The notes: generated by a model from the sequence alone, not told the origin. DNA of 37,821 nucleotides from Octopus bimaculoides (GCF_001194135.2 NC_068991.1:44563123-44600943), one strand, 5' to 3'. Positions 29,688 through 30,958 are shown, counted from the first letter of the stretch. Numbers and translations: made by a program.

Positions 29688-30958
29688 ATTATAACTGAGA
29701 GGTTCCAATTTCCAATGTTCAGAGTTAGTTACTTGTCTCCGATCATCAATTGGTAAACTAAGCTTGCTTTTCTTTTGAAATATTTGCTGTTTGAATATTT
29801 TTTGAAATATGAAATGTAAATTTGAAGAAAACACTTACCTGTACATTCTTTTGTTTCAAAACGTTTGTTAGTGACACACGCAAAAATGGCTGCTGTTTTT
29901 GATTTCATTTCTGGTTCTCATGGTAATATTATAGACATCTTAAACTTCACATGAGTGAAGCCAATCTAATAACTATTCTCATGAAATTGCATTGTTGTTT
30001 ATGTAATATTTTAAAGTAATACTTTTAAGTAATGTTTTTAATAAATACTTTTTAAATTAATGTTTTTTTACAAACAATGAATGTGTATGTGTGTGCTCAT
30101 TTTGCATGCAGCTGTGCAAACATATACATATATATATATACATATGTACACTCAAATACAAATACATACACAGAATTATATATGCATGTGTACATAAACA
30201 TATATGCATATATACACATATAGACAGGCAGCCACACATATTAAAGCATTTATCAATAAAACACATTAATTAAACTTTTTAAAATCAACTTTTTTTCCTG
30301 CACCAGAATAAAATTCAAGGAGACTTGTATCTACATATGAAATACTTAGCCATGTGATTTCAAAATGTTTAATGAATATGTTTTATTGATATTAATATGC
30401 TTTAATATGTGTGGGTGCATGTCTATGTGTGTATATGCATATATATGCACATGTGTATGTGTATGCTTGCAGATATAATTATGTGTACATTTGTGTCTAT
30501 GAGTGTGCATATGTGTATATGCATGCATCTGCCTGGCCACATGCAAAATAAACACACACATACACATTCATTGTTTTTAAAAAACAAATTAAATATTCAT
30601 TAAAAGTATGAATTATAAATATTACTTTAAAACGTTACTCAAACAACAACACAATTTCATGAGTATAGTTGTTAGATTGACTTTGCTTATATGAAGTTTA
30701 AAACATTTATAATATTACCATAAGAACTAGAAATGAAATCAAAAACATGAGCTTGAGGTAGCTAATTTTGCCTGTGTTACTCACAAAGGTTTTTAAACAA
30801 AAGAATATAACGATAAACGTTTTCTTCAAACTTTCATTTCATATTTCAAAAAATATTCAACGAGTGAATATTTTAAAAGAAGAACAAGCTTAGTTATCAG
30901 CTGATGATCAGAGATGAGTAATTCTGAGTATTGAAAATTGGAGCCTTTCAGTTATAAT
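29688..30958. repeat. Long imperfect inverted repeat / foldback element, arms ~29688-30287 and ~30355-30958, loop ~67 nt
   Basis: Manual alignment of 29894-30000 against the reverse complement of 30641-30747 gives 92/107 identical with no gaps. Homology is continuous from attataactga (29688) / tcagttataat (30958) inward to aaaatca / tgatttc. Confidence 0.93.

What the first reader, a model, noticed from the sequence alone, without database searches (positions are those of the whole stretch)
29688..30958. 1.27-kb foldback palindrome in the Nav1 intron: predicted ~600-bp dsRNA stem in a cephalopod neural pre-mRNA
Seen: two ~600-bp arms in inverted orientation around a ~67-nt loop. Even the inner TA/CA microsatellite-like segments are mirrored, and a sampled 107-nt block is 86% identical with no indels. 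No coding capacity or clear TSD. It lies ~3 kb downstream, in transcript sense, of the 471-nt exon donor. Known: long intramolecular dsRNA is the ADAR substrate, and coleoid cephalopods edit neural transcripts, including ion channels, extensively. Inference: this is either an undescribed foldback/MITE-like family or a local inverted duplication. It could act as a hyper-editing site, an ADAR-recruiting element or a modulator of splicing of this 23.5-kb intron.
Basis: partly seen in the sequence, partly recalled or inferred. Interest (0 to 1): 0.7.

Follow-up and report, generated by a model that had tools for sequence, protein, structure and literature searches.

The report
Decaying intronic hairpin repeat, octopus Nav1
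A real but ordinary 1.28-kb inverted repeat lies in a long intron of the Octopus bimaculoides sodium-channel gene; it would fold into a long imperfect RNA hairpin of the kind octopus ADAR enzymes edit in bulk, and nothing in the sequence suggests it does anything more specific.

Summary
The arms are 29682-30287 and 30355-30964, around a 67-nt loop. They are 83.7% identical, with 14 small indels (blastn E 6e-142). The transcript-sense RNA folds at -579 kcal/mol with about 510 inter-arm pairs. The inner 986 nt has z = -28 against shuffles.

The context also holds. The 471-nt exon (34492-34022, minus strand) is identical to O. bimaculoides Nav protein A0A0L8HNT8. The hairpin starts 3,057 nt past its donor, in a 23,535-nt intron that splices in frame.

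The functional ideas gain no support:
- Arm mismatches are strand-symmetric: 32 leave a G:U pair on each strand, and both strands fold equally well. That looks like neutral decay.
- Only 13% of the stem is "nearly perfect" by a published criterion.
- Nothing comparable lies within 10 kb of the same exon in another Octopus species. That species' four-fold-site divergence (K2P 0.63) far exceeds the arm-to-arm divergence (0.19).
- Known editing-inducer hairpins act over hundreds of nt, not 3 kb.

The origin stays open, because no tool here reaches the octopus genome. It is either a palindromic non-autonomous transposon copy or a local inverted duplication. Long dsRNA-forming repeats and massive hyper-editing are already documented in this species. 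The likeliest effect is passive hyper-editing.

The parts
29682..30287 (-). Arm A of the foldback (606 nt). In the transcript (minus strand) it is the 3' arm. The outer ~380 nt are unique sequence. The inner ~220 nt are degenerate TA/CA microsatellite-like sequence plus a 13-nt tandem repeat at 29993-30067.
30288..30354 (-). Unique 67-nt spacer, the loop of the predicted hairpin.
30355..30964 (-). Arm B of the foldback (610 nt), the 5' arm in the transcript. It is 83.7% identical to the reverse complement of arm A, with 14 indels.
34022..34492 (-). The 471-nt exon that encodes the Nav domain I-II cytoplasmic linker. Its donor (AAT|gtaagt) lies 3,057 nt upstream of the hairpin in transcript sense.
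   Evidence: PF11933, E 4.4e-11; 157/157 aa identical to A0A0L8HNT8
10487..34021 (-). The 23,535-nt intron that contains the hairpin. The splice 34022->10486 keeps the reading frame (..KLEDN|ESISSGG..).
   Evidence: The intermediate 'exons' of the database gene model look spurious (inference).
10376..10486 (-). Next credible Nav exon (aa 843-879 of A0A0L8HNT8, 100% identical). Acceptor ccttttag|, donor |gtaagt.
29442..29672 (.). A second, small MITE-like palindrome (231 bp; arms 29450-29518 and 29591-29659, 84% complementary), 10 bp from the outer end of arm A.
   Evidence: self reverse-complement match E 2e-28; MFE -75 to -77 kcal/mol
29833..29841 (-). Perfect 5' splice-site consensus CAGGTAAGT in transcript sense, inside arm A. 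It is the only one on that strand in the window. It is predicted to be held in the duplex.
   Evidence: and the sequence
29267..31145 (.). The 1,879-bp gap-free contig that carries both palindromes. It lies between assembly gaps 29257-29266 and 31146-31748.

Best explanation
This is a non-coding foldback-type inverted repeat specific to the O. bimaculoides lineage. It sits in the 23.5-kb intron that follows the I-II-linker exon of the Nav1 gene, and it is decaying neutrally.

Origin. My best guess is that it is a dead copy of a palindromic non-autonomous DNA transposon (a long-TIR or MITE-like element) that inserted into TA-rich intron DNA. This step is inferred.

Mechanism. Both arms are transcribed on one pre-mRNA with only 67 nt between them. 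The RNA should therefore snap back into a duplex of about 510 bp that is mismatched and bulged. This is shown by folding only. A duplex of this kind is the generic substrate of ADARs. The expected outcome is promiscuous A-to-I hyper-editing of the intron, as a by-product, before the intron is degraded. This step is inferred from published octopus data, not shown for this locus. I see no evidence that the element controls recoding, splicing or expression of Nav1.
For: Structure and significance.

Intronic location in a neural gene, in transcript sense.

Neutral decay:
- The 96 mismatches split 64 transitions to 32 transversions. Of the 64 transitions, 32 leave a G:U pair on the plus strand and 32 on the transcribed strand.
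- The two strands fold equally well (-581.0 against -578.8 kcal/mol).
- Identity is fairly even along the arms (0.66-0.88 per 50 columns). The longest exact run is 26 nt, so there are no recent conversion tracts.

Lineage-specific:
- Arm-to-arm K2P is 0.19. Four-fold-site K2P between the window and the other Octopus species (L001) in the adjacent exon is 0.63 (28/66 sites).
- L001 has no homologue of the arms and no long non-microsatellite inverted repeat within 10 kb downstream of the exon.

Transposon leaning:
- The outer ends are sharp and symmetric, in TA-rich DNA, with possible TA, TATA or TATTA duplications.
- There is no coding capacity.
- The arms contain internal short tandem repeats.
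- A second small MITE-like palindrome lies 10 bp away.
- A mariner-type transposase fragment occurs in the same intron.

Hyper-editing expectation (PMC5625713):
- O. bimaculoides CNS shows about 1.05 million hyper-editing sites.
- Its genome has an exceptionally high fraction of loci able to form long dsRNA.
- Most hyper-editing lies in neighbouring inverted repeats or in palindromic repeats.
Against: - No second copy of the arm could be found anywhere: in the window, in 30 kb of other cephalopod loci, in 5.8 billion predicted proteins queried with translated arm pieces, or in metagenome and viral contigs. None of these collections holds the O. bimaculoides genome, so the negative is weak. Even so, family membership remains undemonstrated.
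- The target-site duplication is not distinguishable from chance in AT-rich DNA.
- No RNA data were available, so neither transcription through the element nor editing is shown.
- Dating from arm divergence assumes the arms were identical at birth and that no gene conversion occurred.
- The four-fold-site estimate rests on 66 sites.
Confidence: 0.6

Rival explanations
1. Local inverted duplication. A ~600-bp piece of pre-existing intron, already holding a degenerate microsatellite, was copied in reverse next to itself by a replication template switch or fold-back repair event. This left a 67-nt spacer. The consequences (hairpin RNA, passive hyper-editing) would be the same as in the best explanation. 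Only the origin differs.
For: This is the only copy detectable in any sequence available here. There is no unambiguous target-site duplication. The arms run right up to a short unique spacer. The mirrored microsatellite-like segment fits duplication of ordinary intron DNA.
Against: Palindromic non-autonomous transposons are the commonest source of this architecture in animal genomes (own knowledge; the Xenopus Harbinger example is in PMC5625713). Both outer ends are sharp and lie in TA-rich DNA. A second, unrelated small palindrome lies 10 bp away, which suggests insertions rather than a single rearrangement. The copy-number negative carries little weight because the host genome could not be searched.
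Confidence: 0.3
2. Functional cis-element. The hairpin recruits ADAR and acts as an editing inducer element that raises recoding in the nearby Nav1 exon(s). Alternatively it modulates splicing of the 23.5-kb intron, for example by masking the CAGGUAAGU at 29841-29833 or by shortening the intron's effective length.
For: The predicted duplex is long and stable. Long intronic hairpins and inverted Alu pairs can raise site-selective editing in cis, independently of sequence (PMC3479170, PMC4053975, PMC5654063). A perfect donor consensus lies inside one arm.
Against: - The hairpin is 3,057 nt from the upstream exon and 19.2 kb from the downstream one. Described inducers act at ~150 to a few hundred nt.
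- There is no strand-specific retention of pairing (32 against 32).
- The stem is 16% mismatched with 14 indels.
- It was not found near the orthologous exon of another Octopus species. The Gabra-3 inducer, by contrast, is conserved wherever the site is edited.
- In squid, mature mRNAs can be edited without intronic sequence (PMC7192619).
Confidence: 0.07
3. Small-RNA precursor. The hairpin is processed by Dicer into endo-siRNAs, like the hpRNA loci of Drosophila, or it is an evolving proto-miRNA locus.
For: Only the long hairpin architecture. Rfam gives sub-threshold miRNA-like hits.
Against: All Rfam hits fall well below gathering score and lie on TG/CA microsatellite sequence (mir-297/mir-466 type). 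There is no conservation and no small-RNA data. Hyper-editing would work against Dicer processing (own knowledge).
Confidence: 0.03
4. Assembly artefact. Either the palindrome is a chimeric foldback created during sequencing or assembly, or the 1.9-kb contig that carries it was misplaced into this intron by scaffolding.
For: The element sits on a short contig (29267-31145) bounded by gaps on both sides. No independent assembly of this species could be retrieved.
Against: Technical foldback chimeras have essentially identical arms. These arms differ at 96 positions and by 14 indels. That much difference makes them individually assemblable, and it takes evolutionary time to build up. The right-hand gap lies inside a (TA)n run that continues on both sides, as expected for a microsatellite-caused gap rather than a misjoin. 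Misplacement of the contig cannot be excluded.
Confidence: 0.04
5. Two independent full-length insertions of the same ~0.6-kb interspersed repeat, tail to tail and 67 bp apart, in the manner of an inverted Alu pair.
For: Inverted pairs of a single repeat family are the usual source of dsRNA in many animals (PMC5625713).
Against: Two copies 67 bp apart by chance would require a very dense family. The other ~35 kb of the window holds no further copy. Inner and outer boundaries coincide exactly in both arms.
Confidence: 0.03

Closest known systems
Palindromic Harbinger-derived MITE of Xenopus tropicalis, the most hyper-edited repeat of the frog (PMC5625713)
   Same: A non-coding repeat that is itself a near-palindrome with a short loop. 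It folds on its own into tight dsRNA and needs no neighbouring inverted copy.
   Different: The frog element is ~200 bp, belongs to a demonstrated high-copy family, and its editing has been measured. This element is 1.28 kb, has 84% arm identity, and its copy number, superfamily and editing are all unknown.
Inverted Alu pairs in human introns and UTRs, the generic ADAR hyper-editing substrate
   Same: Intramolecular duplexes several hundred bp long, with mismatches, in non-coding parts of pre-mRNAs. Editing there is mostly a by-product or serves to mark the RNA as self.
   Different: Alu duplexes arise from two independent retroposon insertions, usually hundreds to thousands of nt apart. This is a single symmetric unit with a 67-nt spacer.
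Gabra-3 intron 9 editing inducer element and related EIEs (PMC3479170, PMC4053975, PMC5654063)
   Same: A long intronic hairpin downstream of an exon in a neuronal ion-channel or receptor gene.
   Different: The Gabra-3 element is ~150 nt, lies ~150 nt from the edited site, is conserved from human to chicken, and has been validated by deletion. This hairpin lies 3 kb away, was not found in another Octopus species, and shows no sign of selection on pairing.
Foldback-type elements with long TIRs (Drosophila FB, Galileo of the P superfamily; PMC4168063 listed)
   Same: Very long inverted arms that make up most of the element, internal short tandem repeats in the arms, and frequent lack of coding capacity.
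   Different: Those families are defined by many copies, 7-9-bp target-site duplications and a known transposase partner. None of these could be shown here.

Membership tests
Foldback / MITE-like non-autonomous DNA transposon | Terminal inverted repeats or an overall palindromic structure with sharp ends | tested here: met
   The arms are 606 and 610 nt at 83.7% identity. Homology stops symmetrically at 29682 and 30964.
Foldback / MITE-like non-autonomous DNA transposon | No transposase coding capacity | tested here: met
   The longest stop-free stretch is 73 codons, in microsatellite-like sequence. Translated arms gave no hit at E<=10.
Foldback / MITE-like non-autonomous DNA transposon | Target-site duplication of a length typical of a superfamily | tested here: inconclusive
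   TA, TATA, TATTA or TTATAA are each possible, depending on where the end is placed. All lie in AT-rich, self-complementary sequence and cannot be told from chance.
Foldback / MITE-like non-autonomous DNA transposon | Multiple dispersed copies with the same termini and different flanks | not testable with these tools
   No other copy in the window, L001 or L002, nor in protein, metagenome or viral collections. The O. bimaculoides genome is not in any searchable collection.
Foldback / MITE-like non-autonomous DNA transposon | Termini shared with an autonomous element | not tested
   No repeat library (Repbase or Dfam) is available. The mariner-type fragment at 19253-19735 was not compared in detail.
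ADAR hyper-editing substrate (long intramolecular dsRNA) | Long, largely paired duplex within one transcript | tested here: met
   508 inter-arm pairs, helices up to 41 bp, MFE -578.8 kcal/mol, z = -28 for the inner 986 nt. It lies inside a frame-preserving intron of Nav1.
ADAR hyper-editing substrate (long intramolecular dsRNA) | 'Nearly perfect' pairing (>95% over >=40 nt, the criterion of PMC5625713) | tested here: met
   Met for only part of the stem. Two segments (29791-29832 and 29894-33), 82 of 628 columns, reach 38/40. The rest is 66-88% identical.
ADAR hyper-editing substrate (long intramolecular dsRNA) | Clusters of A-to-G mismatches in RNA-seq reads | not testable with these tools
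   No RNA-seq data are accessible.
Editing inducer element (EIE) | Close to a site-selectively edited exon (about 150 to a few hundred nt) | tested here: not met
   3,057 nt from the upstream donor and 19.2 kb from the downstream acceptor, compared with the distances in PMC3479170 and PMC4053975.
Editing inducer element (EIE) | Evolutionary conservation of the hairpin wherever the target site is edited | tested here: inconclusive
   Not found within 10 kb downstream of the orthologous exon in another Octopus species. That species is distant (four-fold K2P 0.63) and its editing state is unknown. Within the element there is no strand-biased retention of pairs.
Editing inducer element (EIE) | Removing the hairpin lowers editing at the target site | not testable with these tools
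   This needs an experiment.

The most novel reading that the evidence does not exclude
The hairpin is a young, species-specific ADAR-recruiting element. At 3 kb it is brought close by folding of the intron, and it raises or tunes recoding in the Nav1 I-II-linker exon, or it gates use of the perfect cryptic donor inside its arm. That would be a case where a newly acquired foldback repeat rewires editing or splicing of a cephalopod ion-channel gene.
Probability: 0.06. Interest if true: 0.6.

Novelty: new member of a known kind. Interest (0 to 1): 0.2.

Why it matters
As it stands, the element matters little. It is one more long dsRNA-forming repeat in a genome already known to be exceptionally rich in them and in hyper-editing (PMC5625713). 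It could serve as a convenient, well-delimited test locus in a well-studied neural gene. RNA-seq could ask how an aged, 84%-identical hairpin is edited in octopus, and whether such hairpins influence recoding of exons kilobases away. One practical by-product is that the public O. bimaculoides Nav1 protein model appears to carry about 154 residues of spurious sequence taken from this intron.

Tried and rejected
1. Copy number through proxies. I concatenated stop-free translations of the unique arm parts and searched 5.8 billion proteins: no hit at E<=10. Exact look-ups of two arm ORFs and of the full Nav protein in the contig collection were not on record.

2. DNA scans. Two arm blocks conserved between the arms were scanned in JGI metagenome contigs, and one of them in IMG/VR. 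All returned zero matches. That was expected, and the result says little.

3. Orthologous site. I retrieved a 20.6-kb locus (L001) around the same exon from another Octopus species. Intron DNA aligns for only ~150 bp beyond the exon, so a site-by-site presence/absence call was impossible. I can only say that no arm homologue and no long non-microsatellite inverted repeat lies there.

4. Rfam. Only sub-threshold microsatellite-type miRNA hits. Rejected.

5. A tRNA-like SINE head. 'GGTTCCAATTTCC' near the outer end resembles a B box, but it lies at position 8-20 of the arm and there is no A box. I rejected it by eye and did not run find_trnas.

6. Target-site duplication scan. Many short AT-rich candidates, none significant.

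7. The intermediate 'exons' of the UniProt model, as a challenge to the 23.5-kb intron. I judged them spurious for three reasons: one is a microsatellite translation, the L002 homologue lacks them, and the direct splice is in frame. Pfam gave no hit for them, so their supposed transposon origin is only my inference.

8. The Liscovitch-Brauer 2017 paper could not be opened.

Full report
**Observation**

The foldback is real. The repeat finder returns a nested set of inverted pairs that tile one palindrome. The innermost pair is 37 nt at 89% with 67 nt between its arms. A gapped alignment of the left half against the reverse complement of the right half gives:
- arms 29682-30287 (606 nt) and 30355-30964 (610 nt), with the loop at 30288-30354;
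- 492 matches, 96 mismatches and 40 gap columns in 14 gaps;
- 83.7% identity over aligned bases, and K2P 0.19.

blastn of one arm against the window finds the other arm at E = 5.7e-142. Every other hit is confined to the TA/CA microsatellite-like part of the arm. The loop size, the mirrored microsatellite-like segments, the lack of coding capacity and the lack of a clear target-site duplication are all correct.

**RNA structure**

In transcript sense (minus strand) the 1,283-nt element folds at -578.8 kcal/mol. The fold has 532 pairs, 508 of them between arms. There are 13 helices of 15 bp or more, and the longest is 41 bp. The inner 986 nt folds at -432.8 kcal/mol against -203.9 +/- 8.1 for dinucleotide-preserving shuffles, z = -28.4.

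The duplex is long but imperfect. The longest exact arm match is 26 nt. Only 82 of 628 alignment columns lie in a 40-nt window with at least 95% identity. That is the threshold Porath et al. used for 'long, nearly perfect dsRNA' (PMC5625713).

**Context**

The ORF at 33959-34522 (minus) contains a 471-nt exon, 34492-34022, with acceptor tttcag| and donor |gtaagt. It matches Pfam PF11933, the cytoplasmic domain of voltage-gated Na+ channels (E 4.4e-11; precomputed for the hits). It is 157/157 aa identical to residues 533-688 of UniRef A0A0L8HNT8, 'Sodium channel protein', Octopus bimaculoides. The window is therefore O. bimaculoides, from a gapped short-read-style assembly (N runs).

The next convincing exon is 10486-10376 (aa 843-879, 100% identical; acceptor ccttttag|). 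Joining 34022 to 10486 keeps the frame (..KLEDN|ESISSGG..) and gives a 23,535-nt intron.

The database model also inserts residues 689-842 from four intronic pieces: 33543-33481, 18632-18390, 17645-17520 and 17334-17212. The first of these is a translated microsatellite (IYLHTYLYREREIYIH). The homologous gene on L002 goes straight from the linker exon to the aa 836-879 exon. I regard these pieces as spurious (inference). Either way the palindrome is intronic. It lies 3,057 nt past the donor and 19.2 kb before the acceptor.

**Artefact?**

The element lies on a 1,879-bp contig between two gaps. Misplacement by scaffolding therefore cannot be excluded. The palindrome itself is not a technical chimera, because its arms differ at 96 sites and by 14 indels. 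The right-hand gap sits inside a (TA)n run that continues on both sides.

**Selection or decay?**

Of the 96 mismatches, 64 are transitions. Exactly 32 of these would leave a G:U wobble on the plus-strand RNA, and 32 on the transcribed strand. The two strands also fold equally well (-581.0 against -578.8 kcal/mol). Identity is fairly even along the arms. Nothing suggests that pairing in the transcript is being preserved. This is the pattern expected of neutral decay.

**Other species**

The protein search with the exon recovered the same exon on a 457-kb ENA contig from another Octopus species (P0001, 99% aa; L001).
- The exon DNA is 88% identical, and four-fold sites differ at 28 of 66 (K2P 0.63). 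That is about three times the arm-to-arm distance.
- Intron DNA aligns for only about 150 bp beyond the exon.
- Within 10 kb downstream there is no homologue of the arms and no long inverted repeat other than microsatellite.

If the arms were identical at birth and were not homogenised afterwards, the element arose well after these lineages split. A pre-split palindrome should still be recognisable to itself in L001, and none is seen. This argues against a function conserved across Octopus. The comparison covers one species and 10 kb.

**Origin**

I could not count copies in the host genome.
- The window holds no second copy.
- Translated arm pieces hit nothing among 5.8 billion proteins.
- Scans of metagenome and viral contigs found nothing.
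- The O. bimaculoides assembly is not in the contig collection, so these negatives are weak.

Two independent head-to-head insertions of a dense repeat are unlikely. There is no further copy in ~35 kb, and both the inner and outer boundaries of the arms coincide.

Between a palindromic non-autonomous DNA transposon and a local inverted duplication, I lean towards the transposon, roughly 60:30. The reasons are:
- the ends are sharp and symmetric, in TA-rich DNA, with possible TA, TATA or TATTA duplications;
- the arms carry internal short tandem repeats;
- a second, unrelated 231-bp MITE-like palindrome lies 10 bp away;
- transposase debris lies in the same intron;
- palindromic MITE-like families are common in animal genomes (own knowledge; the frog example is in PMC5625713).

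**Likely effect**

Porath et al. report about 1.05 million hyper-editing sites in O. bimaculoides CNS. They also report an exceptionally high genomic potential for long dsRNA (4.4e-3 of random 50-mers). Most hyper-editing lies in neighbouring inverted repeats or in repeats that are themselves palindromic (PMC5625713). Zhang et al. reach the same general conclusion across Metazoa (PMC9989829). If the intron is transcribed in neurons, this hairpin should be hyper-edited as a matter of course.

That makes it an ordinary member of a documented class. The more specific ideas fare worse.
- Editing-inducer hairpins act at ~150 to a few hundred nt and are conserved with their target sites (PMC3479170, PMC4053975). 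This one is 3 kb away and is not conserved.
- Squid channel and pump mRNAs can be edited without intronic sequence (PMC7192619).
- Rfam offers only sub-threshold microsatellite-type miRNA matches.

**Verdict**

I class it as a new member of a known kind, with interest 0.2. The one reading that would make it interesting is a young ADAR-recruiting or splice-gating element for Nav1. The sequence does not exclude this, but I put it at about 6%.

Noticed in passing
window 29442-29672: A second, small palindrome (231 bp; arms 29450-29518 and 29591-29659, 84% complementary, 72-nt spacer; self reverse-complement E 2e-28). It lies 10 bp from the outer end of the large foldback. It is MITE-like, unrelated in sequence to the large one, and has no other copy in the window, L001 or L002.
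   Followed up: partly
window 33481-33543, 18390-18632, 17520-17645, 17212-17334 (minus strand): The public O. bimaculoides Nav protein model (UniRef A0A0L8HNT8) contains residues 689-842 that map to these intronic pieces. One piece is a translated TA/CA/GA microsatellite and the others look repeat-derived. A homologous gene (L002) lacks them, and splicing 34022->10486 directly is in frame. They are probably spurious exons in an automated gene model.
   Followed up: partly
window 29833-29841 (minus strand): A perfect 5' splice-site consensus, CAGGTAAGT, in transcript sense inside arm A of the hairpin. It is the only occurrence on that strand in the 37.8-kb window. The other arm has diverged at this spot. 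It may be a cryptic donor normally buried in the duplex.
   Followed up: no
window 29343-29411 and 30997-31065: A direct repeat, ATTTATGAYTT..(TG)n (81% over 69 nt, largely driven by the TG run), brackets the two palindromes together. It could be chance next to microsatellites, or the trace of a larger duplication or insertion event.
   Followed up: no
window 19253-19735 (+); also 5769-6047 (-) and 902-1192 (-): Transposon debris in the intron. ORF 19253-19735 carries a mariner-type Transposase_1 (PF01359) fragment (E 1.2e-6). By eye, the other two ORFs look like transposase or reverse-transcriptase remnants, but they gave no Pfam hit.
   Followed up: partly
window 31027-31114: A (TG)n...(CA)n microsatellite hairpin. 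It gives sub-threshold Rfam matches to the mir-297, mir-466 and mir-3688 families (best 66.6 bits against a gathering score of 90). This is a composition effect, not a miRNA gene.
   Followed up: yes
L002 (Logan SRR26493809 contig, 10,179 bp): A compact Nav gene fragment with nine or more exons in 10 kb, 58-79% identical to the octopus protein. [quoted passage not shown] The organism was not identified.
   Followed up: no
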